Below, piece by piece: positions 1-58,478 of a DNA stretch of 64,000 nucleotides. The position numbers and the translations under genes are program-made. The DNA comes from Paragordius varius (Eukaryota; Animalia; Nematomorpha). Location of the stretch: contig OZ176054.1 in NCBI GenBank assembly GCA_964247055.1, forward strand, positions 9,486,001 through 9,550,000. The letters run 5' to 3'. Every line of letters begins with the position of its first letter. The stretch's first letter is position 1. Below the pieces are notes generated by a model. That model ran no database searches. It saw only the letters and a list, made by a program, of their open reading frames with translations, and was not told where the DNA came from.

Positions 1-63
1 AAATAATTATCTTTTAATTTTTACACTTTGTATTTATAATTTCAATTTTTATATAAAAATTAC

Positions 64-12493
<12,430 letters not shown>

Positions 12494-12505
12494 ATCAAAA
12501 AACGA
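12494..12505. promoter_or_regulatory. 12-bp gap between divergent start codons of DHX38 and SART3 (putative shared or overlapping bidirectional promoter)
   Basis: CAT at 12491-12493 and ATG at 12506-12508 are separated by ATCAAAAAACGA. The minus strand over 12503-12513 reads TTCATTCATTC, an Inr-like TCATTC repeat. Confidence 0.6.
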
Positions 12506-15500
12506 ATGAATGAATTACAATTATTTAAAATGCAAAACCACGACCAAAAACTTCAAGAAGAAATAACTGAAATGTTGGAAACTGAGGGAGAAACAGAACA
12601 AAGAATAAACGATTATATTAAAATAATTGAGAGTAATCCGTTCGATTATAATGCTTATATTTATTTGACAAAAGTATTAAATAGCTCTATTTTAAGATTT
12701 ATCGAGAAAATGGACATTTGGATGAATTAAGAATGACTAGAGAAAGATTTAGTTTTATATATGCATTACCAATAACCTTTTGGATAGATTGGATTAAAGT
12801 TTTGTAAAAATAAAATTTAGGATGAAATGCGTATTGCAGAATCGGAAATTACCGACGAATTACAATCGATAGATAAAGACCAATCTATTCCAAATTCGGT
12901 TTTATTATCTATATTTTTTGGTTCATATATGTATATTGCTGTGAATAAAATATTGGACTTAAATAATTAATGCTATCTATTTAGAAATTATATTATAACA
13001 AATTAATCGTCAACTGAAAACATTTTCCATATATCTTTCGTAACTTCAAATAAAAGTTAAATTTTAATTTTAAAGTAATTTGGATTTAACCATTGGACGG
13101 TATGAATTACCGACAATGTTGACCGATAATAGCTCCGAATGTTGTTTTTTCGGTATATTAAATGTTTGTTGTGATGTTATTTTAATGCACCTTTCTATTT
13201 ATTTTAATTGCATATTCTTCAGAACTCGTCACCTAGTAAATTGTATGGTTTGTGTATCGGAGTGTTATATTCCAACCGCAACAATTTAATTTTTTCAATC
13301 TTTTATACCTGCCAATAAGCAGTCCGATCATGAATGCAGTAATCATAAGCAGTTATTTACTATCGCAAATATATTTTGTGATGTTAAGCGTTTAAATTAA
13401 ATTGTGTCACATTGCTATAATGAATTAATAACATTACTAAAAGTTATGCACTTTTGCATATTTAATTAATATACCAATATATTAAATTTAATCACGTTAT
13501 AAACATATTTGTGAAAAATTTTGACTCCTTATTTTTAAAAATTCTTAGTGACAATCAGATTGCACTTATAACCGATGAAAACCAATCCCAGTTACAAAAT
13601 GGATATTTTAAATTTGAGTAAATAAAATACTAATTAAAATATAATAAATGTCCGTCATCCGCTTTTTACAACATAAATTTTGGTAATGATGAATGCCCCA
13701 GACCAAGAATAATAATTGCATTTTTATGCCGTCAGATTTAGAATCTCGAAACTGCGTATTTTTTCTTTTTTGACTGTCACTCCTAAACAGGTAATTATAT
13801 CAAAGCCTTTACAAGTCTAGATAAAATATACGTCATTACCCTTTATATGAAAAAAGGGAAAAACTAGACTCTACAAAAGGGATCAGATAGCTGCCAAAAT
13901 TCGTATTTTATACCTTAACAATTAACTCGATGTTTTAGGTTACTTCCATTCTAAATCTTTTTGATCGAGCTATCCATGATTTCATGAGCATTGATGTTTG
14001 GCTCGATTATGTTCAATACGTTATTGGTCAAATGGGCCCTCTAGGGTTATCACGCGTTAGAGATACGTTTGAAAATGCTATTGCTAATTGTGGCTTGCAT
14101 GTCACGCAAGGCAGTATAGTATGGGAAGCTTACCGAGAATTTGAAATGGCTCTCATTGCTTCTTACGAGAACCGGTTGGAGTCGATACGTGAAGAGTGTA
14201 ACTTTTTTTTCTTTTTTAGGAAATCATTATTTGGCTTTAAAGTTTAATTTAGTGTAAGATAATTAGTTAGTTCCCTAAAATTATTAGTATTTTGTTTTAA
14301 AGCATATCTATACAGTAATTAGCGAAGGACCAAAAATATAATGCTTATACTTTTTTCGCACCACAGCATAATACATAATTTTGTTAATATGTGGTAAGTT
14401 ATGATAATTTTGCAAAAATTTGAGTTTTAAATGTTTAAGATTTGGCTTTCTGCTAATAAAGATTTAGTCGTCTATTTTAGAGTATGTTGGTATAAAACAT
14501 TTAATGTTTATAAAGGTTAGTTAAGTTTTAATTGGAGTATATTCCCATATCTAATATTACTACTTTTTTTCTTAACACAAATCCATGATATTGTCGAGGC
14601 ATTTAGTGACATTAGAAGAACCCGCTCTAGACACAAATGAAACTGAGCTTGCTTTAAAACCATTGAAGGATGAATGCATAAATCAATACATGCGAGTGTT
14701 TTCACTTTTTAAACGGCAACTATCTGTCCCGCTACAAAGTATGGAAGAAACTGTCAAAGAATTTCGAGATTGGATTCAAATCATTGATCATCGACACAAA
14801 AGTCTTGGGATAAATTGTTCCGGGTAAACAATTGCTCTTTTTTTTAAAAAAAAGGTAGTTTGGTTTTATTTACTACTAAATGTAGTAGATTATTTACTTT
14901 TAGAGGTTATTGGATTATGTGGATCATATTAAATATAATTACAGTTAAATGTTTAAAATTTTATTGCAAAATTTTATATATCATTGCAATAAATTATATA
15001 TATATATATGATAACCATTCAATATGTAACTCATCCTACTTTTTTAAGATTAAACTGGTCAAATTTTCTTTTAATGCATACTAAAGACTAATTTTTTTAA
15101 AACCAACTCCCCCAATTCGTATATCAAACAATCTATAAAATTATTATTTAATTCATATTCTGTTTTATTTTTTTGTAACTTAATAATTTTACATTTAGTG
15201 GTGACACCAAAATCTTGACGTTCTTGGACCCAAAAGAAATTGACATTATTGAAAAACAATTATATCCATCAGCCTTTTCCAAACTTACCGAAATTAGCCC
15301 TTTTGAAACAGCCATTGAGAATGCACATCAAGCTATTATTGCACATCAAAATTCTGAAAAGTTGCATTTAGAATATAGAATTTCAATAAATGAATAAATA
15401 TTTTTTTAAAGAAATTTAAATAATTTGTTTATGACGCCCAATATTAATAATCCTACATTTGTATATTATAGCAATCTTTCCAGAGATGAGATGAAAGGTA

Positions 15501-18500
15501 TTTTATTCTTTCTATCAATTATCAATCAATAAATCGTATTTGTTAGTCTTTCATGGTTAATATTATGATTTTATGTTATTTCAAGGCATATAAATGGCTA
15601 AGCCATTCTTTAATTTTTTAAAAAGTATTATTCAAAAATAAATGCGAATCCAAAAATTTGTGTGATATAAAAAAACGGGGTTTCTCATTATTTTAAATAG
15701 CCAAAAAAGTCTTTTTTGGAACATCGAATTGAATTATAATGTTATATCAAATTTAATTCAATTAATCACAATTAATACTATTTAACTAAATTTTAGTATT
15801 CTCGTGTGCGATCCCCACTATTTTTCATTAAAAGGGGCTCTACATCTTACGAATAATTTTTTATTTAATTTATGATTTTATTATTCAGAACATAAAGACA
15901 TGTTAAATAACTTGAGATTCAATGAAAGGCAATGTTACGTGGCATATATTAATCACGAAATGCAAAAATGTTTTGGTTCGTCTCAATCCGGTGGTCAAGA
16001 TACAAAATCTCGAAAAAGTTTTTTCTTTATATTTTTTGTACATACATAATAAGTTAAGGAATAAATTTATCGATATAAACTTGGCTTGTTTTATTATGTT
16101 GTCAATGGGTTTCGAAGATATTTGTAGCTGCTTAGTTAATTGAAATATTTATAAGCTATTGCTAATCTATCGTTATCAATTATTCTTATTATGATCCTAT
16201 ATTGAACTAAATTTATTATTGCGTTATAATCGATCATTTAATTTCCCATATAGTTTGCATTTTTCCAGGACATTTATCCAATATTAAGAGCAGAAAAACC
16301 AAATTAAATACAATAGCCTAGTTATGCGTGATTGTCTAAAACTTTCATTAATTAGCTCTATATTTTACTTTTTTTCCTATTTTATATTTTCATTTTGATT
16401 TTAATGACAGGCGTAAAATAAATCCATTAATTTTTTTGTTTTTCATATTTTTTTAACAAGCCGTAAATAGTTCATCATTTAATACAACACCTTCACGCAT
16501 AATTTGCCTGTATGAACGGGCATTATGTGAAATGTCCAATGATCCAGAACTATGGATTGCTTATGCCCGACTTTATATTGACAAATTACGAGATATCACT
16601 AGGGCTCAATCTATTTTAGCCCGAGCAGTTCGATGTTTTATTGGTAAAGCCGTCGTGGCTTATGGTTACACCATCCCAATCGATAACACTTCTTTTGCAG
16701 AGGCACCAATAGATATGGGTGGGTAAATATTTTTCATTTGAAAAAGATTTAAATTTTGTATTTGTAAGAAGTATATTATCTTTGCTATCGGAATATTTAG
16801 ATATTATAATGTTATGTTTATATAATATTTAAACATTTTAGGTTTTTAGTACTTGTGTCATATGCGGCGGTAAATGTTTTTCGTTTTTAATCTTTTTTTG
16901 TAAATGAAATCGCAGTAGATCTCTTCTTTCCCTTAGATACTCCCAATATAATGAGTTTTTTTAAAAAGGCGCTATTTAACTGAAATGAACTCACTTTTTT
17001 GATTGAAGTATTTGGTTTTTTAGTCATATTCGTCCAAACTTGAGTTAACGTTTGTGTGATTTTATAAGCCAACTCTAAAAAAAATCTATGATCACTTTTT
17101 AAATATTCATATAATTCTATCATAAAATTGTATATCATCGAAAAAATTGTGGATATTAATTGAAATTACTCAAAAATATTTAATTTTGTTTTCCACAAAA
17201 AGAGTGCGGGTGCAATATTGAACCATATAATTTTTTTCACACAATGGGAATCATTATACGGTGGGTCCACTCTGTACTTTTTTATAATTTTTATTTTTGC
17301 TTTAGAAAATTTTAATAAAAAATCGCATTTTTTACACAAAATAAATTATATTTGTTTAGGCCAAAACGATATAAAACAATTCGATAAAAAAGATGTACTA
17401 AATTCTATTGCAAAACTATGGATTGGCTTGTTGGAATGTTTTGAGAGAATTCATTTGGAAACTACAACTCATGAAGATAATGGATCTCAAACACAACATA
17501 ACATTGAAATGGATTCTGTGTAATGATCAAAATAAATTTTTAATATAAAAGTTTTAAATACAATGTAATCCATTTATTTTTAGTTGTTAATCTATATTTA
17601 CTATGATATATAATTGTAAAAACAAAATATAAAAAGTTAATGGCATATTATTAAAGATAAAACCATATTTCACATCATTTTTTTTTACATAATCTATCGT
17701 TGCGACGGGTAAATATATAAGTTGGTAACTTACTAAATAATTTATTTCACTTTTATAATTTTTAAAATTACCCGAACAAAATCAAGCTTAAAAATAAATG
17801 TTTTTTTTGGAAATAATATATTGTTTTGGCTTTTATCACTTAACTTTTTTTACATAACTTTATATATAAATTAATAGCAACAGTGAATGGGGGGAATATA
17901 ATGATCAACAAAATCCATCCAGTTTTAGTAAAGATTCAATCCAAAGTATAATAAAATATTTTGTGTTTTTATAAGTAAAATTTTTTATGGTCTTATAATC
18001 CAAATATATATTTTAAATTTTATAATGGATAATAATAACTTTTGAATATTTAGATTTAACAATCTTTTTTGTAGTTTAAAAGTGCTTGATATTTTTTCTT
18101 ATCAAAACGCTTTTCACATAATACTGTTAATGTTTTGTCAGTCATAATATCAAATATCGCTTATATTAATTTCTTTCAATACATTTTTTTAATCAATCAG
18201 TTTATAATTATTAAAATTAATTCCTTAATAGATATTCATTTACCACACAAAATACCCAATGATGAGTTAAATAATGAGAAAAAAACTCATTTGTCTAAAG
18301 GGAGCGCATTACTTCAATCTATCAAAAAATTCAAAATTCCTGATCTTATTGATGCGACCGATATATACAATTGGGTAATATATTTGATGCTATATTTTTA
18401 TTTTATTTTTTTAATCAATTAATACGGTACAGTTTATATTTGATAAAAATTTAAAATTGATAAAATAACTATAAAAATAAAGATTGGCGCACATACTACT

Positions 18501-21500
18501 ATTTAATTTAATAGTATTTTTCCTTTATTAATACTTAATTTTTTTGTGAAAAAAATACTATATTTTTAAATCAATAAAAAATATGAATCAAAATTTTTTT
18601 ATTACACGTAAAATAATTCAAATAACAATAGCTAAAGAAATATCATCAATCATATTTGAACATTAACACCGGCAGCTTAAATCATTGGGATGAATATGTA
18701 CGATATGCAGAAAGTTGGTTGGGTTTAGCCCTTAAATATGTCACCCTACTACCTTACATTTTGCGATATTTTAGCCAACAAAGTGGTGCAATTATGTAAT
18801 TATTTTATAATTTGGTATTATGTAAATTTACCATAATGGATTTCATTTAAAACATAATTTTTTGATAACTTATATTTGTTAAGCATGAAAATATTTTAAT
18901 AAAATTATATATCTTAAGGCATTGATAATATTTATGTAATTTGATTATATTATATGAATTATTTTTTAAATTTAAAGCATCAATAGATAATTTTATTTAT
19001 TCTTAGTAATATTGATCAATATAATCGATTGGAGAATTTGGTATCACACCATAGTATAAGCAAAAGGCAACGTGAATTCCTTACTGATTCTCTAAAATGC
19101 GCTCTTACCCTTTGGATGACTTATCTTGGATTCATAAAGCGTTTAATTGGTTCGTCGGCCAAATTATTTTAGTTTCTTATAATTTAGTTATGAAATTAAA
19201 ATCTGATTATTTTTCTATTAAATTAATTCCCATTTTAAAAGAAATATGGACAATGTGCTATAAATGTCATTAAGTGAATTAATCATAAATCAAAACATAT
19301 GTGCGAAATGGTAATTTTTTCAAAAATAATTTTTAACAAAAAAAAACATTGAAACGAAACTTTTTCGACAATTTTTTTTATTATAACCAATATATTTTTG
19401 GTAAATTTCCATTGCAAAATAATTTATAATCATATTGGTTTTTTCTTTAGACCGTTTCACAACTAATTCAGGGATGGATGTTAACATTGAGGCTATTAAA
19501 GCTCTTTTTTGTCAAAGATTGTGTGATGCCCTGACATTTATACAGTCACCCATGTATAGAGATGCACTAAATCAATCAAGAGCATTTAATGATACCCTTT
19601 TCACATTACTGGAATATAAAGCAAAAATGTTGGCACATCCTGTGTTTAAGTAAGTAGTATTTTTAATACCTTTGTCAAACTTTTTAGGATGCCCTAAAAA
19701 TGAACCAAAAACACTAAAGAATTTTGAAGACTTACTATGTAAAAATTGTTGAATTTAGAAAATTTAACGATAAATTTATATCCAGATTATTCGCTATAAA
19801 TAATCTTTATGATCGGCTTCATTATGAGAGCCGTTACTTAAATACGTTAAACTTTTTAAGGACGAGTTTTATAGATAAAATTTTTCTTTGAGTAAATAAG
19901 TTTAGATGGTGTCTGCCAATTAGTGTGACATAACAAATTTTATGATGGATTATTTTTAGTGTTTTATATAATAATTTTAATTTTTTATATTTTTATACGT
20001 CGTTTTATATCTGTTTAATACATGGTGCCAAAATATATGGCTTAAAAAATTAGGTTTTAGCTATCAGCGTTCATTACTACAATAATATTTTCAATTTGTT
20101 ACCAAACAACTCAATTCATTATATAAAGACTATAAATATATTATAATTTTATAATAATAATAATAATATAATATGATTCATTAAAAAATATTGCATGGAA
20201 AAATTCATGATAAAGTAAATAATTTATATTGAAGGCGTTTGTTTACTCGGTTTTTTAAATATAAAATAAACACTTTTTGATATTTAGTAACATGAAAGAA
20301 AGTAGAAACGCTTGGGAAACGATAATAAAACAGGGCGGAAGTTATTCTTCAACCGTTTGGTTGGAATGGTATTATACGGAATGTATGGCTTCTAATTCAA
20401 TCACCCATAGCACTAATGATTCCAAAAAGGATGCCCGAAAGATTTTGATTGTAACTTTTTATTAGTTTACTTTGTAAATTTAAATAATTAAAATACATTG
20501 AATTGTTAGCATGTAATATTATTTAAATAAAATTTGTTATTTAATTGGTCTACCATTTACAATTCAATTTCACCCTTAAACAATTCAAATTTACCCTTGA
20601 ACAATTCAAATTCACCCTCAAATAAAATATATGTTTTTTAAGATTAAAAAACACCTATATTTTATATATTTTTTTAAAAATAAAAATTTTGTTTTAAATT
20701 AATATAATACTGAAAAAATAATACACTATATTATAAACATATATTTCATATTAATAATGAGTTATATTAGTTCAAAAACACGTAATTGATTTTTAGGGTG
20801 AATTTGAATTGTTCAAGGGTGAATTTGAACTGTAAATGGTATATTACAGTATATGTACAGTAATGTTGGTCAATCCACGTTATTGTTTGCTAATTGGTAA
20901 TACAGTAGCATATGATAAAAAACAAATTTTGTTCATAATTAAAATTGATGTTGTAAAATATGGAAAAAATTGTATTTCAACTATTTGTTGTTTTTACCCA
21001 TACAATTGACCTACATCAATGTGCATACTATATATTCAGGTTCTTATAAAGGTTTTCTTGATGTCATCGTATATATTAAAAATACTATCAGTTGTTTCGT
21101 TTATGTAATTGTTCGTTCCAATTTTATATGACATGTAATATTAGTAGTTTATACTTTATATTTACTAACATTTTATTTCAATATTTTAGTCCTTTTATCT
21201 TTGAAAAATTAATATATTTGCATTTAATTAAAAACTTTTATTCATTTTTTGCGTAAGAGAGCCTTATCAAACAGCAATGTTGAGAGGCCTGAACCATTGG
21301 TAGATGCATTACGATGGCATGATCGCATATATTATAATTGTGACATTGATAATGACAATAAATTATCTTGGTGGGATTTACAAAATGACACTGAAACTTT
21401 GTGCACGAATGTGTTAAAACGACACACTAAACGAAAACAAATGGAAGTAATAACTATATAACAATATTTTATAAGTTTTACTTTATCTGATTACATGGAT

Positions 21501-24500
21501 TGATAATTCTTTTACCAGTGATTGGAATTTAAATTGGAATCATGCATTTTTTTAGTTGTTGTGAATAGGGTTGTGCTGACCAAGTCATGACCATGGTCTT
21601 TCACTTTTTTTATTGCTAGTAAAAAAAATTTTTGAAAGAGAGATAGTAAGATATTATTGTTTTTTATATATTTTTTATTTAAATATTCTCAAATATATAT
21701 ATTTAAATATGTTTATTTAACAATATATTAAAAATGTTAAGCATGCATCCTTATAACTATCCAGTTATTTTGAATACATTCGAGACTTGTGCAAAATATG
21801 CAATTACATATATGTGAACCAATAAAATGAAAAAACATCTTATATTTGGATATTAATTGATTGATGAAAGATAGTGTAAAACAAACTAGGTAATTTTTTT
21901 TGAAAAATCCAGCATTGAAAGCTATGTATTTTATGATTTAGAAGACCACAAACTTGTGGCGAAATACAATTGAAAACAAAATTTATTTGATTAATATTTG
22001 TAAATAATAAATATCAAAAAAATGTATTATACAAGCTTTTAAGAAAAAAACATCCCAATATTAGTGGGACGCAAGTTTCAGCATTATTTTTACAATATCC
22101 AATATCGCATGATATTTACTTAAGTAAAAAGTAGTCATGACCATGATCTGACTGGTTCTGACCGGACTCTATTGAAAAAGCAGTCAAATGCACAACCCTA
22201 GTGGTGAAATTAACTGTTTTAAAATTATTTAGTGTTTGAATTTTAATTAATATAGAAAAATGTGATTTATATAAATGGCATATTTATACCATTTGGAAAT
22301 AATTAGGCTCTCCAAATTTTTTAAATATGGAAGCCAGAATCATTTGACCAAATTTTTTTGCAAAATATTCACTTAATTGACCATTTTTGAAACATTTTTT
22401 TCTGAAAATATATTTGTAACCTAAACCATGGACATGGAACCGCAAAAACGATTCCGAATCCAATCATTTAATTTACATATTCTAATTAATTATCAAAAAT
22501 TTTATTACGTTTTATCCAATTATTTTTGAACTAAGAATGAATCTGTGGAGTCAAAATCTAAGAAACGAAAGGGAGAAACAAACCGTTTTGAACCAACTAG
22601 AGATACAAATGGTAATTTTTGTTGTTCTATTTATTCATTTAGTTTAAAAAATTTTGTTTTTAATACAAACACACCTTTCTTACACCACGTGTTACTTTTT
22701 GTTATTCAAATTAATCATTTTTATATTTTATATGCATTTGCGCATATCTTTATCAGTATCTAAACGACCATCGAAGAAAGAAACATCCCGAGAATTCGAT
22801 CAAAACAAGATAGATAATGATGGTATTTTTAAAACACTTTTTACAATTATTTTAAGATTAAATTTTTATAATAAGGTTTATTAATTTTTAATGAATTTAA
22901 TCATTATGTTATAGGTTTCATTATACCCGCCATTCCCAAATCAATATCCAATGAATCCAAAGTATATAATTATTTACTTTTTTGCTTTTATAACAAATAA
23001 GGATTCTTTAATTTAATAAAATAATACTTTTGCCTTACGTTTCATTTTTGATTCATTAATTGTTTTACAAAAAAAATACGTATAAAATAAATGATATTTT
23101 CATTTTCTAGCAAAATTAATAAAAATATTTAGTTTTCCACCACCAGAAACATTAATCGAGAAAACGAAATGGAATATATGGAACAAGCTCCACAACCGTC
23201 CTCTTTCTCCTTGTATAACAGTGGACAAAATGTTGATTTTTCTTTAGTGCCTGAACGCACGCTTTTTCTTAGCAATTTATCATTTAAGGCAACAGAAAAG
23301 GATATTGGTGATTTGTTTAGTCAAGTAATATCAAAAAATTTTCGTTAGAATTTAGAATTTTATTCCAACTTTTTTTTTGAAAACAACTATTAGCGCATTA
23401 GAAATTTTTGCATTTAACAATTTTGACTTTATTTTCAGATTTTAAATTATTTAATAAAAATATTAAATGGACTTTTGAGTTGTATTTAAGTAGGGATCTT
23501 TAAAACATACAAATCACATATAATAATTATAATATACGTGCTTTAATAGATATCAAATAAAAGAAAACAGAAAATGAAAGCAAAAAATTATTGCTTTGAA
23601 ATCTATTAATTATTATTATTTTTTTATTACTATATTATGCAAAAATTGACTTTGAAGTTTATCTTTCAACTACTTTATTGGTTAGCAAATGTATTACAAT
23701 TTTTGTGTTGAATCAATACATTATAGTGTTTTTTACATATTTTGATTTTATGTATTTTTTAGTCAAATAACATTTTTTTAACCAAGCGCAACATTTTTTA
23801 AGCAAACGCAACATTGTTCCGTTTGGTTGTATGTTGCTCTTGACTGAAAAATGGTATAGTTAAATAATAAAATAATATTTAGTTTGGGGAGATTTCCCAC
23901 ATAAGTCTTGTTAAAACGCGTAAAACTCAACATTCACGTGGTTATGCTTATCTGCTGTTCAATAATGCACAAAGTGCACAAAAAGCATTGGCTAATGACA
24001 GGATTTTACTGTTGGAAAGACCTGTTTTCATATCTGAATATGGGATTAAAGGACATGCACAAACGTATATTATTTAGTTTACTTTTTTTATTAAGTAAAA
24101 TTAAACAAAATTTAATTATAACATTATATATGCTTTTATAAATTACATATTTCTGAAATATTTTTTTCATCATATTTGGTTGATAAAATATCCAAAAGCA
24201 ACAACAATATTATGAATCATACTTTTTAAATATAAACACTTTTATCAACATTATAAGGAATTTATATGTTAGATCTAAAACACGTATATTGCATGGTATT
24301 TATTATGTTATTTGTTTTGAGTAACTATTATATTTAAATTTTTTTATATTTTTTATTCATGCAGACTCAAAACTACTGATAGTGGTGTAAAACGAGATTT
24401 TATTAAAGAAAGCATTCAAAAACCATACGTCTCCAAATCTAAACTACGTGTAACTTCACAAAATGCTGACAATTTATCACAAGAGGTAGATGGTAAGGAT

Positions 24501-29070: not shown

Positions 29071-32000
29071 AGTTACAACTGTTGTTACGCGCGCGCGTTC
29101 GACCACTACACAAACGAAAAATTCTAAATTCTTATTTATTTTATATTATATCTATTTATCTTCAAAGTTTATTCTATCTTTTATCACTTATCCTATACTT
29201 TAAATTTTGTTATAACATACCTATTCCCATTTTTGTTTTTGGACGTAGGACTTACCGTTGGCCTTTTCCTATAATTTGCCTATTAATATTCTCTTAAATA
29301 TATAGATTGTATTCTTGGATAAGTATTGTAACATTATTTATTTTATTTTTTACTATGACACAAAAATAACCCTTGATTTATATTGTTTTATACATAAATT
29401 TTGCTTTAAATTTTTTTATTGCGAAATATAATTTCCGTTTTTACCTATAGCCTAGGTTTTTTTTAACATCTATCAATTTGTCATAATTAGTTCGACACTT
29501 CAATTTTATTATTTTTATTTTGTTTGTTTAAAGCTGTCAAATGAATATTGATGTGTATAGTAATAACCGGTCAGGCCTGACCAGCCGCGGTTTTGGTGTT
29601 GTGGCCAATAATACAAATAGAATGCAAAGGAATACGGGATGCCTGTATTTTGCTAGTTTAAATGTTGGTTCATTAAAAAGTAAGTTAAATGATATTGTGA
29701 GAATAATGAAAGTTAAACATATTGATATTTTGGCATTACAAGAGACTCGTTACCGCGGAAACGGAGCAAGGACTTTGGAAGAGAATTATCGACTATATTA
29801 CTCAGGTGAAAGTGGCGGACGAAATGGAGTGGCAATTATCATTAATCCCAAATTGTCCAATCAGGTTAAAGAAGTAAGACGCTATAGAATCATGAATTTA
29901 GATATTTTGGTAGGTAACGAGGTCATAACGGTATTTAGTATATATGCCCCGCAAATAGGTTTACCGAAATAAGAAAAGGAGCAATTTTACGAGACTCTAG
30001 ATGAAAAATAGTCGCTCTCCCTCAGCTCAGAGTCAAGTTTTTATGTGGGGATTTTAATGGTCATCTTGGTTCAAAAAGGGAATCTTTTGAAATATGGCAC
30101 GGGGGACATTCTTATGGAGAAAGAAACGAGGAAGGAATTAATTTGCTCAGATTTGCACAATCTCACAATTTGGCGATAGCGAACACGTTTTTCGAAAAAA
30201 GAGATTCTAGTAACTTTTAAGAGCGGCATAAACAAATCTCAAATAGATTTTATACTTGTTCCAAGAGACTTATTGAAGCTTGTAATAGATTGTAAGGTCG
30301 TGCCAAACTTAGAGGTTAGTTCGCAACATAATTTACTTATTTGTAAATTTTTCGTGAAAGAAAAGTCTAAACAAAGTGGTTCTTATTCAAAGAGATTAAA
30401 AAGTATTAAGTGGGAGAAATTATCCGAAAAAAGGCAGGCTTTTATAAAAGAAATACGGTTATCCGAGGATGGTGGGTTAAATGGTGATTGGGATAAAGTA
30501 AGTCAGTTAATCAAAAAGGCAGGAACTCTAGTTTGTGGATTAAAAGGCGGAAAATATCAAGTATACAGAGAGGCTTGGCTTTACGATGAAAGAATAATAT
30601 TGATGTCACGAGAAAAAGGTAAGGCTTTTGACAAATGGAGACATACAAGGAATGATGATGATAGAGATAAGTATAAAAGTTTAAATAAGGAATTGAAAAA
30701 ATTAGTCGGCCAGGTTAAGAAAGAAAAAATGAATTTATTTTATGATGAGTTAATTAGTAAGCAAGGTTTAAACAAAGTGTATAAAGTTGCGCAGCAAAGG
30801 AAAGGATGGATTTGCCAGGTTATGCGACTGCAATAAAAGGAAAAGATGGAAGCTTGCTGTGCGAAAATGTAGCAATATTAAAAAGATGGAAAGAGTACTT
30901 TGTGAGTATAGATGAAGGGGTAGGCGAGATATTTTTGCCAAATACAGTTGAAGCTACTGATAGACAAATAGAAGCAATTACACAAAAGGAAGTAGAATCT
31001 AATTTGTTAGAAATGCCAAACAACAAAGCTGTAGGATCGGACGACATAAATATAAATTGTTGGAAAGTGCTTGGAAATTCTGGATTAAATTTTTTGGAGC
31101 GTGTATTTAATAAAGTTGTTTCAACGTATGAAATCCCGGTTGAATGGAAGGAAAGTTTAACTGTGCCTTTATTTAAAGGAAAAGGTGATATAAATGAATG
31201 TAGTAACTATAGAGGGATAAAACTTATGTCTCACACTATGAAATTGTTTGAAAAAATAATTGAAAAGCGAATCAGGAAAATGATATCTATAAAAGGAAAT
31301 CAATTTGGTTTCATGCCAGGAAAGTCAACAGTAGATCCTATACATGCGGTTAGGAGGTTGATTGAAAAACACATTGAAAAAAAGAAAGAATTACACGGGG
31401 TTTTGATTGATATAGAGAAGGCGTTTGACAGGATTCCTAGAGAAACTATTTGGTGGAGTCTCCGTCGTAAAAAGGTGCCAGAAAGTTATATTAAGTTGTT
31501 ACAAATAATGTACGAATCACACACCTCCAGGATTAAAACTCCACAAGGTTTATCAGAGCCCTTTTCAATAAAGCATGGAGTCTACCAAGGCTCATCACTC
31601 AGCCCCTTATTGTTTATAATTTGTATGGACGAGGTAGCCAAGGTTGTTAATGTGAGTTCAGGATGGTACTTAATGTATGCAGATGACATAATCATCTTGT
31701 CTGATTCATTAATTGAGTTAAAGCGAACGGTAAACAGATGGGTTGTTATGCTGGATCAATATGGTCTGAAAGTAAACAAAGCAAAAACCGAACTTATTAC
31801 TTTTGGGGGTCCACAACATGAAATGGTAGTTGATGATAGTTGGGTTCTGAAGGGTAAAGAAAGTTGCAAATATCTGGGAGCTATGTTAAGTGCAGATGGT
31901 TCGTTAACTGACGATATTAATTTAAGAATAAAGAGCAGCTGGGTAAATTTGAAGAAAATTTCGAGCGTATTATGCGATCGAAATATTGATGTTAGAGTGA

Positions 32001-32470
32001 AAGGTAAGATTTACAGTTCAGTTGTCCAGCCCTCAATGATGTATAATTCACAGACAAGAGGGGTCAAAAAATCCGAAGAAAGACAATTTAACGTGACTGA
32101 AATGAAAATGCTCAGAATGATGTGTGGGGTAACTAGAAAGGACAGAATCGATAATATATTTATTCGTGGGAGCACAGATATTAAACCAATAGTGGAAAGA
32201 ATGTCAAAAAATAGCCTACGTTGGTTCGGGCACATTGAAAGGAGAGATTCTAATTATATTGCAAAAATAATAGATGGTTATATAGTTGAGGGAAAACGAG
32301 GACGTGGGCGACCTAAAACAAAATGGATAGATACAGTAAAAAGAGAGCTAGCAGAATACGAGCTTAATGCAGAGGACGCCATAGATAGAGTTTTATGGCG
32401 AGACAGGTTGTATAACATGACCGCTCTCACGAGTGAAAAAATGCAATGTAATAATAATAATATTGGTTAG
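29071..32470 (+). mobile_element. RTE-clade non-LTR retrotransposon, near full length; endonuclease part disrupted, RT ORF open
   Basis: APE endonuclease motifs (ASLNVGSL, LALQETR, SIYAPQ) with a stop at 29970 and frameshifts. The 554-aa ORF 30806-32470 has NYRGIKLMSHTMK, QFGFMPGKST, DIEKAFD, GVYQGSSLSPLLF, YADD, RWFGHIERR and GRGRPKTKW. It ends in an (AAT)n run. The 5' boundary is approximate. Confidence 0.92.
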
Positions 32471-33764: not shown

Positions 33765-36700
33765 ATGATTACTCTAGTCTTCTTTTCAATATTTAACCTT
33801 GTAAATGGGCTAACACCAATATCTATTTATAAATCATCACAATCTTTATCAGAATGTATCGAAAATATTATGTCAGATGGCTCAAAATATCAAGAATTAC
33901 AAAAGATTTATGAAGATATCCAATATCAACATTTGCATATTGATTGGTTAAAAAAAGTCCAACAAATACATGATAATTTAGGTTTTTTAAATTATAATCT
34001 TAGGTATAAGTTTTCTAAACAAACGAGCCGAACTTGATAGATTGGCTAATCGAGCAGCTAGTTATTATGATAATGCCTTATCTCATGGTTTTCCTCAACA
34101 TATAAACCATATCAATCAATTAAGTGAATCAATTTTTATCGACTCTGACAAGATTTCAGAAATTTTTAATACATCAAATAAGTATTTTAAAATATAATTA
34201 ATAGTTATTATAATGATTTAAAGTTTACAATTAACAAAAGTTCTGTTAAAATTCCACTGCAAATTCCAGAAAATAATACAAAAATTTTAAATACGATATG
34301 GTGGACAGCTAATTTAGATAAGGTGTTTATGGAGAATGCACAAAATGATAAGGATTTAATGTAATATTTTATATATGTTACGATCTTGATAAGATTATTA
34401 TTAGAACCATATTTTTGATAAGCATATAAAGCGATTATATCATTACTTGATTAAACTTAAATGGTTTCTATTTTTCACGGCATCGTTTTTAAATAGTTAA
34501 TTAACACTTCATTGCAATTTTATTTTTATACAGTGATGACATTTTGGGGTAGTTTTATATCCCAAATCATAATGTAATTAAACTACTGTTTATAAAGTTT
34601 TAGTTAAAATTTAAATATCAAACATTGTTCTTCTGTATTGGATAAATTAGCTTGTATTTTTGACAATTTTTCAAATTCTAAAGCCTTATATTGGGACAAT
34701 CCAAAACACGATTTATATAAACAGCTGAATATAAAATAATTCATGTTTTTGTTAGGTGAAAGCTTTCTAAAATTAATTATTGACATTTTCTAACCAATAT
34801 ATTGATATATTTGCCTGTTGTATTAGCGAGTTCAAAAAATGTAAAGAAAAATGGCCGTGAATAAGTTTGAGATGCAAATTAACAATTTTACATTATATTT
34901 TTTTTTGAAGATGCACTTAAAAAGCTAAAATAAGCATATTTTTAAATTTGGTACTTTAAATATTTTTTTAAGATTGAAGTTTCAGATCGCTCTAAAAATT
35001 ACCCCAAAAGATGACATTTAAATAATTATAGAATTTTTTGGCAAGCAGAAAGATTTTATTTCAGTGTCTAATGATGTATCGCCTTTGTGGAATGGTTAGC
35101 CATTGTATCCGTATAGAAGCTGTCTGTAATATTTGCGATCATGCCAGGCGTTATCATCAATGTTGGCAACACATAAATCTTTATTTATTGTTTTTTTCCA
35201 GTTAAATGTTAGTCTGCCCCTGCGATGGTTATCGGGATGTAGGGATAAAATTTTATTTGTCCATTGTTCTGGAGCACGTTTGATGTGTCCGAAATATCTA
35301 AGCCTATTTTTTCTGAGCATAATATTTAAAGGTTCGATTTGGTACAGTTTATGAAAATTTGAATTTGACTTATCGGGGTGGAATTTAGCATCCTCTTTTC
35401 CATGTTCATTAGTTTTTTTCTTAGTTGAATCTGTAATCGGCCACGTCTCGCTTCCATAAAAGAGTATGGGACGTATGCCGGCTTTGTAAATCAAACCTTT
35501 GTTTTTTGCTGATATGTGTTTATTTTTGAGCACAAATTTAAGTTGATGATATTTTACCCAAGCCTGTTGAGATCTATATTTAACTGATTGGTTTATTCCA
35601 CCTAGGCAATGTATGACATCGCCCTAGTATTTAAAATTATTTATTAATTCGATTTTGGCGTCTGCCATATAAAAGTATTTTATTGAAATGGGTGATTTAT
35701 TGTTTTATTTTTGAATGATTCACATATAAATTTATCATTGTTGATTAATGTCCCTTTTATAAGCGAGCACTTTTTGTGTACCCACTTATTGCATGATGTA
35801 CATAGGATTGAATTGAGTTTAACATCTAAATCAGTGGTACTCACCAAAAAAATTTGACGGGCCAAATAAAATATATTATTTTTTCGAGGGCCATAAACCA
35901 ATGGCAAATATTCCATAGCTATTTAACATATATGCACATATTTAGACTCTAAATCAGCACAATGAATTTTTTGCGGATCGCATTTAAATCCAGCTAAAAA
36001 CTTATTTTGCACCATTTAAAAAATTAAAATATTTCGTTAACATTTATTTTGATATTAACCAATAATTTTTGACAAATTTGGTTTCGCCTCATGACAGGCC
36101 AATTTTAATACGTCATCCATATAATCATCGGTTAAGCGATTTCTGTATGTATTCTTGACACATCATTTTTGAATATGCCGCCTCACACGTGTAAGTTGAA
36201 GGAAAAACAGTTGAGATAACTTGAGCACATTTTCTTATATTCTTACATTTATTTGGCACATCTTGCCAAAACTCTACATATCTTTCTTCCCCACGATTCT
36301 CCTTGAATATAGCCTCCTGAAATCATTTTTAAGATCTATGAATTCTTCAATGATATGCGCCTTTCAAAACCAAAATCAAGTTGCTTTATATTGGATATAT
36401 CCATAAGCCATGGATTTTCAACGAGTATTAAGCAATTTTTAATATTTCTAATTCTGAATTTCATCTCATTAGATAAAAATGTTAGATAACCTCTGCGGTA
36501 ATGTCGCAAAGGTAGGCTAATAAAACCCTCTGTTTGTCACTATAATTTGCTCGACAAACTTTCTGTTATCATTTATAAAAAATGGAATTTCATGCCTTAA
36601 AACAAAAAATCTATTCAATACTTTGATAAGGCTAAGCCATCGCACAGCGGTATACAAATATGGTCAAATTCACTGTGGATATCTTTCAGAAGGTTTTTGA

Positions 36701-57689: not shown

Positions 57690-58478
57690 ATGTCTCACAA
57701 CCCAATAGATTTTTATTTAATGCGGGGTAGCGGGCCCTGCAGAGCAGTATGGATGACGGCCAAAGCATTAAACATTCCTTTAACATTGCATGACGTAGAT
57801 TTGATGAAGAAGGAGCAAATGAAACCTGAATTCTTAAAGGTATGCGTTTATACACAATAATAGTTATATTTTAAATTATAACATTGTTATCTCATGCAGA
57901 TCAATCCTTTTCATACCGTGCCTACTATAAGCGATAACGGATTTAATTTATGGGAAAGGTAATTTTTAATTAATTTAAGTCGCGCCATAATGACGTATCT
58001 TGCTAATAAAGCTAATGATGATAAGTTGTACCCCAAGGATATACAAAAAAGAGCCATTGTTGATAGTCGCCTTGATTATGACTTGGGGACTCTATATCCT
58101 CCATTGCGAGATTATGCAGTACATTTAAATATTTAATGTAAGTATGGACCGGCTCTTTTTGGCAAGGAAAAGGATACCGAAAAGGAAAAAATTATGCACG
58201 AAACGATTTCTAAGTTGGAAGAGTTATTGAATCATTCTAAATACGTTGCAGGTTTACCTAAATAATTTATACCTATTTTCTTTATTACAAATTTAGGTGA
58301 TCATATGACTATTGCTGATTTTTCTGTTTATTCAAACATCTCGTTTTTACGCATGGTTAGCTTTGATTTTGACCGTTATCCAAAGATAAGTGCTTGGATG
58401 AAAGAAATTAAAGCATTACCTTTCTACAATGAAGTTAATCAAGGTTTTGAAGACTGGGTCAAGCACGCTAAAAAATAA
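57690..58478 (+). CDS. Cytosolic glutathione S-transferase, Delta/Epsilon-like, 5 exons
   Basis: Exons 57690-57839, 57900-57958, 57980-58118, 58143-58251, 58297-58478 give [101 protein letters not shown]. Missed by the ORF track because of its short exons. Confidence 0.95.

What the first reader, a model, noticed from the sequence alone, without database searches (positions are those of the whole stretch)
12674..12820. Ultra-short 23- and 22-nt introns at the 5' end of SART3
Seen: GTATTAAATAGCTCTATTTTAAG (12674-12696) and GTTTTGTAAAAATAAAATTTAG (12799-12820). The unspliced frame stops at 12730. Removing both restores the SART3 HAT sequence YLTK|IYRENGHLDELRMTRERF..WIDWIK|DEMRIA. The next intron is 1040 nt. 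Established: introns this short are typical of ciliates, nucleomorphs and microsporidia and are rare in animals. Inference: this spliceosome handles introns too short for the usual U1/U2 footprint, with no evident polypyrimidine tract or branch consensus, and also handles kb-scale introns.
Basis: partly seen in the sequence, partly recalled or inferred. Interest (0 to 1): 0.8.

Follow-up and report, generated by a model that had tools for sequence, protein, structure and literature searches.

The report
Two tiny introns in hairworm SART3
The only SART3 (splicing-factor) gene of this AT-rich, horsehair-worm-like animal is interrupted near its start by two very probable introns of 23 and 22 bases, shorter than the roughly 30-base minimum long assumed for animals, at the exact codons where a related hairworm has introns of 39 and 12,725 bases; no RNA was available to show the cutting.

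Summary
GT..AG segments at 12674-12696 (23 nt) and 12799-12820 (22 nt) interrupt the single-copy SART3 gene. Removing them is the only way to keep the frame and the conserved HAT residues.

Searched exon by exon, exon 1 ends at residue 33 of Gordionus SART3 and exon 2 covers residues 34-67. The Gordionus gene has phase-0 introns at exactly these two codons, 39 nt and 12,725 nt long. A tick has its introns elsewhere.

Independent DNA contigs contain both segments. A second haplotype carries a 24-nt version of intron 2, a +2 change that only non-coding sequence tolerates.

U1, U2, U5, U6, U6atac, U1-70K, U1C, SF1 and U2AF65 are all present, and U1 and U2 keep canonical recognition sequences. U1C and U1-70K themselves contain 23-24-nt introns.

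An A lies 8 nt before the 3' end in 10 of 11 such introns, usually within TAAY; this rests on a small sample.

RNA proof failed: three RNA-labelled runs laid nothing on the stretch.

The scan has noted this intron class many times elsewhere in this genome. In the literature, introns under 30 nt are published only for myxobolid myxozoans and Dicyema. I class it as a new member of a known kind.

The parts
12506..12673 (+). SART3 exon 1 (56 codons from the ATG, ends in phase 0)
   Evidence: ORF. Residues 24-56 align without gaps to Gordionus SART3 residues 1-33. Residues 9-54 match positions 11-56 of a profile of 49 SART3 N-termini.
12674..12696 (+). Intron 1: 23 nt, GT..AG, phase 0, 5 G+C of 23, A at -8
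   Evidence: It lies at the same codon as the 39-nt intron of the Gordionus orthologue (L009 4154-4192). It is present in DNA contigs of run X1, with no joint skipping it.
12697..12798 (+). SART3 exon 2 (34 codons, HAT helix)
   Evidence: 50% identical without gaps to Gordionus residues 34-67. Human SART3 chains are its only matches among solved structures. It matches profile positions 60-92.
12799..12820 (+). Intron 2: 22 nt, GT..AG, phase 0, 3 G+C of 22; a second haplotype has 24 nt
   Evidence: It lies at the same codon as the 12,725-nt Gordionus intron (L009 4295-17019). One X1 contig of the ~180-depth haplotype has one extra base after 12802 and one after 12815 (table 4).
12821..12898 (+). 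SART3 exon 3 (26 codons, variable linker; starts with the conserved D-E)
   Evidence: The frame opens only after the stop at 12818-12820. The alignment is weak beyond the first residues.
12899..13938 (+). Intron 3, 1040 nt if the first in-phase GT is the donor; no counterpart in Gordionus
   Evidence: The acceptor is fixed by the stop at 13936-13938. Gordionus residues 68-181 form one exon. The 3' end has a TTAAC-like element followed by a T-rich tract.
13939..14187 (+). SART3 exon 4 (HAT repeat); its 3' boundary is not fixed
   Evidence: Human SART3 5jpz/5ctq, E 5e-17. Pfam HAT_PRP39_N, 36.5 bits. Profile positions 106-183, E 3e-34.
12506..24050 (+). SART3 gene as far as traced: further exons near 14606-14779, 15230-15352, 16481-16633, 19098-19151, 20280-20447, 21213-21440, 23184-23327 and 23883-24050, separated by introns of hundreds of bases to about 1.7 kb
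   Evidence: tblastn and profile hits exon by exon. RRM_1 is split between 23184-23327 (profile 1-21) and 23883-24050 (profile 22-57). The gene is single copy in the genome.

Best explanation
Both segments are genuine U2-type GT-AG spliceosomal introns of the only SART3 gene of a nematomorph-like animal. They are ancestral hairworm introns, shared codon for codon with Gordionus, that are now 22-23 nt long. The same machinery also removes this gene's long introns. I infer, but have not shown, that they are recognised across the intron by a minimal signal set: GT plus A or T at +3, an A about 8 nt before the 3' end (often in TAAY) acting as branch point, and a (T/A)AG 3' end. That leaves about 15 nt between 5' splice site and branch, and almost no polypyrimidine tract. 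U1 and the branch/3' factors therefore probably act in quick succession rather than side by side, and length itself (21-24 nt) is probably part of the signal.
For: (1) Sequence and frame.
(2) Exon-by-exon homology is contiguous across both junctions. Exon 1 ends at Gordionus residue 33, exon 2 covers 34-67, and exon 3 starts with the D-E of residues 68-69. In the profile of 49 SART3 N-termini the exons join at 58|59 and 92|93.
(3) The Gordionus gene (L009) has phase-0 introns of 39 nt and 12,725 nt at exactly these codons. A tick orthologue has its introns at other codons.
(4) DNA contigs of run X1 cover the site in two haplotypes, and one contig carries +2 nt inside intron 2. No joint skips either segment.
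(5) SART3 is single copy and stays readable through HAT and RRM exons to 24050.
(6) Machinery: U1 with an intact 5' ACUUACCUG and U2 with an intact GUAGUA. U5, U6 and U6atac are present, as are SF1, U2AF65, U1-70K and U1C.
(7) The same kind of segment splits the near-invariant U1C zinc finger and the U1-70K N-terminus.
(8) A at -8 in 10 of 11 mini-introns and TAAY in 8 of 11.
Against: There is no RNA evidence. Three runs guessed to be RNA and carrying the same species label laid no contig on 6 kb that contain exons of two housekeeping genes, so excision has not been seen. The branch-site reading rests on 11 introns. The motif test was post hoc (22 of 5000 shuffles), and a single column as uniform as -8 arises in 17% of shuffles. 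Exon 3 aligns poorly beyond its first residues. The Gordionus introns come from an automatic annotation that I could not check against RNA.
Confidence: 0.88

Rival explanations
1. The segments are real introns, but a specialised early pathway removes them instead of the standard U1 + SF1/U2AF complexes. One candidate is 3' recognition independent of U2AF, as by SPF45/RBM17 for human short introns with truncated pyrimidine tracts. Another is a ruler-like mechanism that measures length.
For: Only 4-5 nt lie between the candidate branch A and the AG, too few for a normal U2AF65 site. The 5' sites pair with U1 at only 2-3 intron positions. Lengths cluster at 21-24 nt in the 11 examples. SPF45-dependent, U2AF-independent splicing of short human introns is published (PMC8363638, listed).
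Against: All standard factors searched for are present and nothing shows they are bypassed. I did not search for an SPF45 orthologue. Myxozoans with 22-27-nt introns also keep U2, U2AF1 and U2AF2 (PMC13644364).
Confidence: 0.3
2. The gene is decaying or mis-assembled, and the two segments are frameshifting insertions or indel artefacts rather than introns.
For: Left unspliced, the frame stops at 12728-12730. No RNA was seen.
Against: Both segments have GT..AG ends and sit at the exact codons of two Gordionus introns. All downstream exons remain open and conserved over 11 kb. It is the only SART3 copy. Independent contigs of X1 contain the segments in both haplotypes. The same architecture recurs in the U1C, U1-70K, GST, alpha2delta and Hakai genes.
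Confidence: 0.03
3. The segments are removed or bypassed by a non-spliceosomal route: programmed DNA elimination like ciliate IESs, ribosomal frameshifting, or translational bypass.
For: The segments are short and AT-rich, about the size of ciliate IESs.
Against: No DNA contig of X1 skips either segment (table 5). The boundaries are GT..AG, not TA..TA. Each segment holds a stop in the incoming frame, and two consecutive events of different net shift (+2 and +1) would be needed. The positions are homologous to ordinary introns.
Confidence: 0.01

Closest known systems
Ultra-short introns of myxobolid myxozoans (Henneguya, Thelohanellus, Myxobolus) and of Dicyema japonicum (Hadjez et al. 2026, PMC13644364; Lu et al. 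2019, PMC6736024)
   Same: They are animal GT-AG introns of 20-27 nt. The 5' signal is reduced to about GTa, there is little or no pyrimidine tract, and weakly conserved A residues lie before the AG. They sit at positions that hold ordinary introns in relatives. U2 and U2AF are retained.
   Different: In those lineages the short class is the bulk of introns (medians 22-27 nt; Dicyema mean 38 nt) in compact genomes of tiny parasites. Here two 22-23-nt introns share a gene with introns of hundreds to over a thousand bases, in a repeat-rich 110-Mb genome of an ecdysozoan. In myxozoans the A patch moves away from the AG as length grows; in the 11 examples here the A stays at -8 or -7. Those cases have long-read RNA support and this one has none.
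Ciliate, nucleomorph and microsporidian mini-introns (for example Stentor at 15-16 nt, Paramecium at about 25 nt), as summarised in PMC13644364
   Same: Length-constrained, AT-rich GT-AG introns removed by a canonical set of snRNAs.
   Different: Those are unicellular lineages with uniformly short introns. They have no kilobase introns in the same genes.
Human ultra-short or short introns spliced with SPF45/RBM17 instead of U2AF (PMC8363638)
   Same: A truncated pyrimidine tract forces a different way of recognising the 3' splice site.
   Different: The human cases are 43-56 nt or longer, about twice the length here. Dependence on SPF45 is untested in this genome.
Orthologous SART3 introns of Gordionus montsenyensis (XP_065313538.1; locus L009)
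   Same: Same two codons, same phase 0, GT-AG.
   Different: Their lengths are 39 nt, with a TTAAC-like element and a 10-nt T-rich tract before the AG, and 12,725 nt. Intron 3 of this window is absent from Gordionus.

Membership tests
U2-type (major) GT-AG spliceosomal intron | GT at the 5' end and AG at the 3' end | tested here: met
   for both segments and for the 24-nt allele of intron 2.
U2-type (major) GT-AG spliceosomal intron | Removal restores a continuous, conserved reading frame | tested here: met
   Exon-by-exon alignments are contiguous at Gordionus residues 33|34 and 67|68 and at profile positions 58|59 and 92|93.
U2-type (major) GT-AG spliceosomal intron | Position and phase shared with introns of orthologues | tested here: met
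   Gordionus has introns of 39 nt and 12,725 nt at the same codons, phase 0. These positions are not shared with a tick.
U2-type (major) GT-AG spliceosomal intron | Branch-point adenosine able to pair around U2 GUAGUA | tested here: inconclusive
   Both introns have an A at -8, as do 10 of 11 mini-introns, and 8 of 11 have TAAY. The sample is small and no lariat data exist.
U2-type (major) GT-AG spliceosomal intron | Excised from the transcript (spliced RNA observed) | tested here: inconclusive
   The three RNA-labelled runs laid no contig on 12000-17999, so there is neither support nor contradiction.
U2-type (major) GT-AG spliceosomal intron | The organism has the major-spliceosome parts | tested here: met
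   U1, U2, U5 and U6; U1-70K, U1C, SF1 and U2AF65.
U12-type (minor) intron | Extended 5' consensus (A/G)TATCCTT and a TCCTTAAC branch box | tested here: not met
   The 5' ends read GTATTA and GTTTTG, and neither intron has a TCCTTAAC-like box.
Animal ultra-short intron class (under 30 nt; Myxobolidae, Dicyema) | Length under 30 nt with reduced splice-site motifs | tested here: met
   Lengths are 23 and 22 nt. In 11 examples position +3 is A in 7 and T in 4, with little beyond that, and the 3' end is (T/A)AG.
Animal ultra-short intron class (under 30 nt; Myxobolidae, Dicyema) | The short class dominates the genome's intron length distribution | tested here: not met
   In SART3 only 2 of at least 10 introns are under 30 nt; the rest run from hundreds of bases to about 1.7 kb. 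No genome-wide histogram could be made.
SART3 / Prp24 family (the host gene) | N-terminal HAT repeats followed by C-terminal RRMs | tested here: met
   HAT_PRP39_N at 36.5 bits and RRM_1 at 30 bits. Human SART3 structures match at E 5e-17. The best overall match is Gordionus SART3-like, 388 bits over 7 exons.
IES-like programmed DNA elimination | Segment absent from some DNA molecules; TA-type boundaries | tested here: not met
   No X1 contig skips either segment, and the boundaries are GT..AG.

The most novel reading that the evidence does not exclude
This hairworm lineage has a discrete, length-defined class of about 21-24-nt introns, made by shrinking ancestral introns (39 nt to 23 nt; 12.7 kb to 22 nt). 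A complete, standard spliceosome recognises them by a fixed-distance rule: a minimal GT(A/T) 5' site and a branch A 7-8 nt from the 3' end. This happens in a large-bodied animal with a repeat-rich genome and kilobase introns. It would be a third independent origin of introns under 30 nt in animals and the first in Ecdysozoa. It would also separate ultra-short introns from genome compaction. Default aligners and gene finders would then break many gene models in this species, which could inflate apparent gene loss.
Probability: 0.45. Interest if true: 0.75.

Novelty: new member of a known kind. Interest (0 to 1): 0.6.

Why it matters
A 2026 survey of 51 animal genomes found introns under 30 nt only in myxobolid myxozoans and Dicyema. 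Its authors linked them to parasitic miniaturisation and predicted that more cases would appear (PMC13644364).

A hairworm-like ecdysozoan with 22-23-nt introns next to kilobase introns in one gene bears on that idea in two ways. The lower length limit would not be set by loss of spliceosome parts, and it would not require a compact genome.

The system is also tractable. Orthologous introns differ more than 500-fold in length between two hairworms, and natural 22/24-nt alleles exist.

There is a practical side too. Common tool settings treat gaps this short as deletions or forbid them. Genes such as SART3, U1C and U1-70K would then be mis-annotated or scored as missing in this genome. The nematomorph genome papers held here never use the word intron.

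Tried and rejected
RNA proof: the single read-laying run used three RNA-guessed runs with the same species label plus one DNA run. The RNA runs laid nothing even at 85% likeness. This is uninformative, perhaps because the label covers another species.

Genome-wide length histogram: ORF-pair statistics compared GT..AG with seven control dinucleotide pairs. I tried them with and without an AT filter and a TAAY filter, on the window and on 264 kb. They showed no usable excess, because chance ORFs in this repeat-rich DNA swamp the signal. The method was rejected. More genome could not be fetched.

Exon 1 alone does not find SART3 among solved structures. Exon 3 alone gives no significant alignment.

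The RefSeq Gordionus protein had no locus on record. Its GenBank (CAK) twin did.

U12 snRNA was not found, but the tool warns that this does not show absence.

The invariant-A column is not significant on its own.

Full report
**What is there**

The window is about 27% G+C throughout. On the + strand an ORF starts at ATG 12506 and stops at TAA 12728-12730. A 23-nt GT..AG segment lies at 12674-12696 and a 22-nt one at 12799-12820.

With both removed, three open pieces join in phase 0:
- 12506-12673 (56 codons)
- 12697-12798 (34 codons)
- 12821-12898 (26 codons)

The frame of each downstream piece opens only just before its AG. The preceding stops are at 12682, 12818 and 13936.

One search listed every GT..AG removal that keeps the frame open. 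The other options delete conserved residues. One 11-nt option at 12674-12684 would insert four residues instead.

**Identity of the gene**

The exon at 13939-14187 matches the HAT domain of human SART3 (5jpz, 5ctq; E about 5e-17) and Pfam HAT_PRP39_N. For exon 2 alone, the only matches among solved structures are human SART3 chains.

A search of protein representatives with exon 4 gave 150 SART3 homologues. tblastn and a full-length profile trace further exons to 24050. An RRM_1 domain is split between 23184-23327 and 23883-24050.

The best overall match by far is P0013 (388 bits over 7 exons, against 229 for the next). P0013 is the SART3-like protein of Gordionus sp. m RMFG-2023, a horsehair worm. 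This agrees with earlier scan notes that call the genome hairworm-like. At about 46% identity the relationship is distant. The gene is single copy in the 110.6-Mb assembly.

**Are the two segments introns?**

I searched exon by exon, by reference.

- Exon 1 residues 24-56 align without gaps to Gordionus residues 1-33.
- Exon 2 residues 1-34 align without gaps to residues 34-67, at 50% identity.
- Exon 3 begins with the D-E that follows at residues 68-69.
- Against a profile of 49 SART3 N-termini, exon 1 projects to position 58, exon 2 covers 59/60-92, and exon 4 starts at 104/106.

I then fetched the Gordionus locus (L009) and mapped its protein onto it. It has a 39-nt intron after residue 33 and a 12,725-nt intron after residue 67. 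Both are phase 0 and sit at exactly the codons of the 23-nt and 22-nt segments here.

The tick Ornithodoros has its N-terminal introns at other codons. The two positions are therefore shared only with Gordionus among the three orthologues compared, rather than being universal. Intron 3 of this window has no counterpart in Gordionus.

**DNA check**

Contigs of run X1 cover the whole 6-kb stretch in two haplotypes, at depths of about 200 and about 180. Both segments are present and no joint skips them, so they are not assembly indels or DNA-level deletions.

One contig of the second haplotype has an extra base after 12802 and another after 12815. That makes a 24-nt intron 2 that still has GT..AG ends. 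A +2 change would destroy a coding frame, but an intron tolerates it.

**RNA**

The three runs guessed to be RNA and labelled as the same species laid no contig at all on 12000-17999. This says nothing either way. Excision in RNA remains unobserved at this locus.

**Machinery**

- U1 is present in many copies, and the copy examined keeps its 5' ACUUACCUG.
- U2 is present in many copies, and the copy examined keeps GUAGUA.
- U5, U6 and U6atac are present.
- U12 gave no hit, with a tool caveat that this does not show absence.
- SF1, U2AF65, U1-70K and U1C are present.

Nothing points to a reduced spliceosome.

The genes for U1C and U1-70K carry the same kind of segment themselves. A 23-nt one (L037 1552-1574) splits the near-invariant zinc-finger motif THDS|PSVRKTH. 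Segments of 23 and 24 nt split the U1-70K N-terminus (L036 1639-1661 and 1722-1745).

**Signals**

I compared 11 mini-introns:
- two from SART3
- two from the alpha2delta-like gene
- two from the GST gene
- one from U1C
- two from U1-70K
- two from Hakai

Their features:
- Lengths are 21-24 nt.
- The interior is 91% A+T.
- Position +3 is A in 7 and T in 4.
- The 3' end is TAG or AAG.
- An A lies at -8 in 10 of 11, and at -8 or -7 in all 11.
- TAAY, with its Y at -6 or -7, occurs in 8 of 11.

On the first nine, a look-elsewhere shuffle reached the motif count in 22 of 5000 trials. A single column that uniform arises in 17% of shuffles. The branch-site reading is therefore suggestive only. Both SART3 introns have the A at -8 but not the full motif.

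The 39-nt Gordionus orthologue and the 3' end of the 1040-nt intron show a TTAAC-like element followed by a 10-12-nt T-rich tract. The mini-introns look like the same layout with the tract and the upstream spacer removed.

**Mechanism**

Shown:
- The termini, frame and homology.
- The conserved intron positions.
- The allele length variation.
- A complete machinery.

Inferred:
- Recognition across the intron.
- A branch point at -8/-7.
- About 15 nt between the 5' site and the branch.
- Almost no U2AF65 binding site.
- Therefore successive rather than simultaneous occupancy by U1 and the 3' factors, with length as part of the signal.

An alternative 3' recognition such as the SPF45 route (PMC8363638) is possible and untested.

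**Comparison with what is known**

PMC13644364 (2026) reports introns under 30 nt in animals only for Myxobolidae (medians 22-27 nt) and Dicyema. Those introns have reduced splice motifs, a weak A patch, and retained U2 and U2AF. Dicyema has a mean intron size of 38 nt.

The hairworm genome papers held here do not mention introns.

The present case matches the known kind in size and signals. It differs in that the tiny introns coexist with long ones in the same gene, in a repeat-rich genome. The scan has noted the same class many times elsewhere in this genome.

**Verdict**

I class this as a new member of a known kind, and RNA proof is outstanding.

Noticed in passing
L037 1552-1574 (G000:C7, about 3651595-3651617): The U1C gene has a 23-nt GT..AG segment inside its near-invariant zinc finger. 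The Pfam zf-U1 match is split into positions 1-20 and 18-38. Removing the segment restores THDS|PSVRKTH.
   Followed up: partly
L036 1639-1661 and 1722-1745 (G000:C2, about 1736814-1736920): The U1-70K N-terminal domain is interrupted by 23-nt and 24-nt GT..AG segments. The exons on either side read as the conserved U1-70K N-terminus.
   Followed up: partly
window 14189-14219: A possible 31-nt GT..AG intron with a long T-rich tract lies at the end of SART3 exon 4. The exon 4 to exon 5 boundary could not be fixed, because the next conserved exon starts near 14606.
   Followed up: no
window 12000-17999 (run X1): The DNA sample holds two haplotypes, at depths of about 200 and about 180. The differences and indels shown fall mostly in intronic stretches (for example 13196-13205, 14390-14470, 16279-16397, 16854-16989). 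Only part of the list was shown.
   Followed up: partly
window 12000-17999 (runs X8, X9, X10): Three runs guessed to be RNA, with the same species label as the genome, hold no contig at 85% likeness or better on exons of two housekeeping genes. The label may cover a different species, or a filter may have dropped the contigs.
   Followed up: no
PRP16 exons are spread over 1-12493 with long introns.
   Followed up: partly
window 7419-7607, 4014-4166 and 20534-20654: Tandem repeats that translate as reiterated 7-residue units (of the type ..NLNCSRV..) occur in introns of both PRP16 and SART3.
   Followed up: no
window about 30170-32470: A stretch richer in G+C (0.35), with strong GC skew (+0.33) and very long open frames on the + strand (about 200 and about 560 codons around 30770-30800). 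It may be a mobile element or a large exon.
   Followed up: no
G000 whole genome: U6atac is present (66 bits, C2:4857045-4857187) but no U12 match was found. The tool warns that the negative result is not evidence of absence.
   Followed up: no
L009 (Gordionus OX940783.2:25171411-25238823): The Gordionus SART3 gene spans about 59 kb, against at least 11.5 kb traced here. The intron after residue 67 is 12,725 nt there and 22 nt here.
   Followed up: yes
window 57959-57979 and 58119-58142; 33982-34003 and 34182-34204: GST has 21-nt and 24-nt segments, both 3n in length and each with an in-frame stop. The alpha2delta-like gene has 22-nt and 23-nt GT..AG segments. All have the same AT-rich build and A at -8. 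I used them only for the motif table. For GST I judged restoration of the conserved sequence by eye from memory of insect GSTs.
   Followed up: partly
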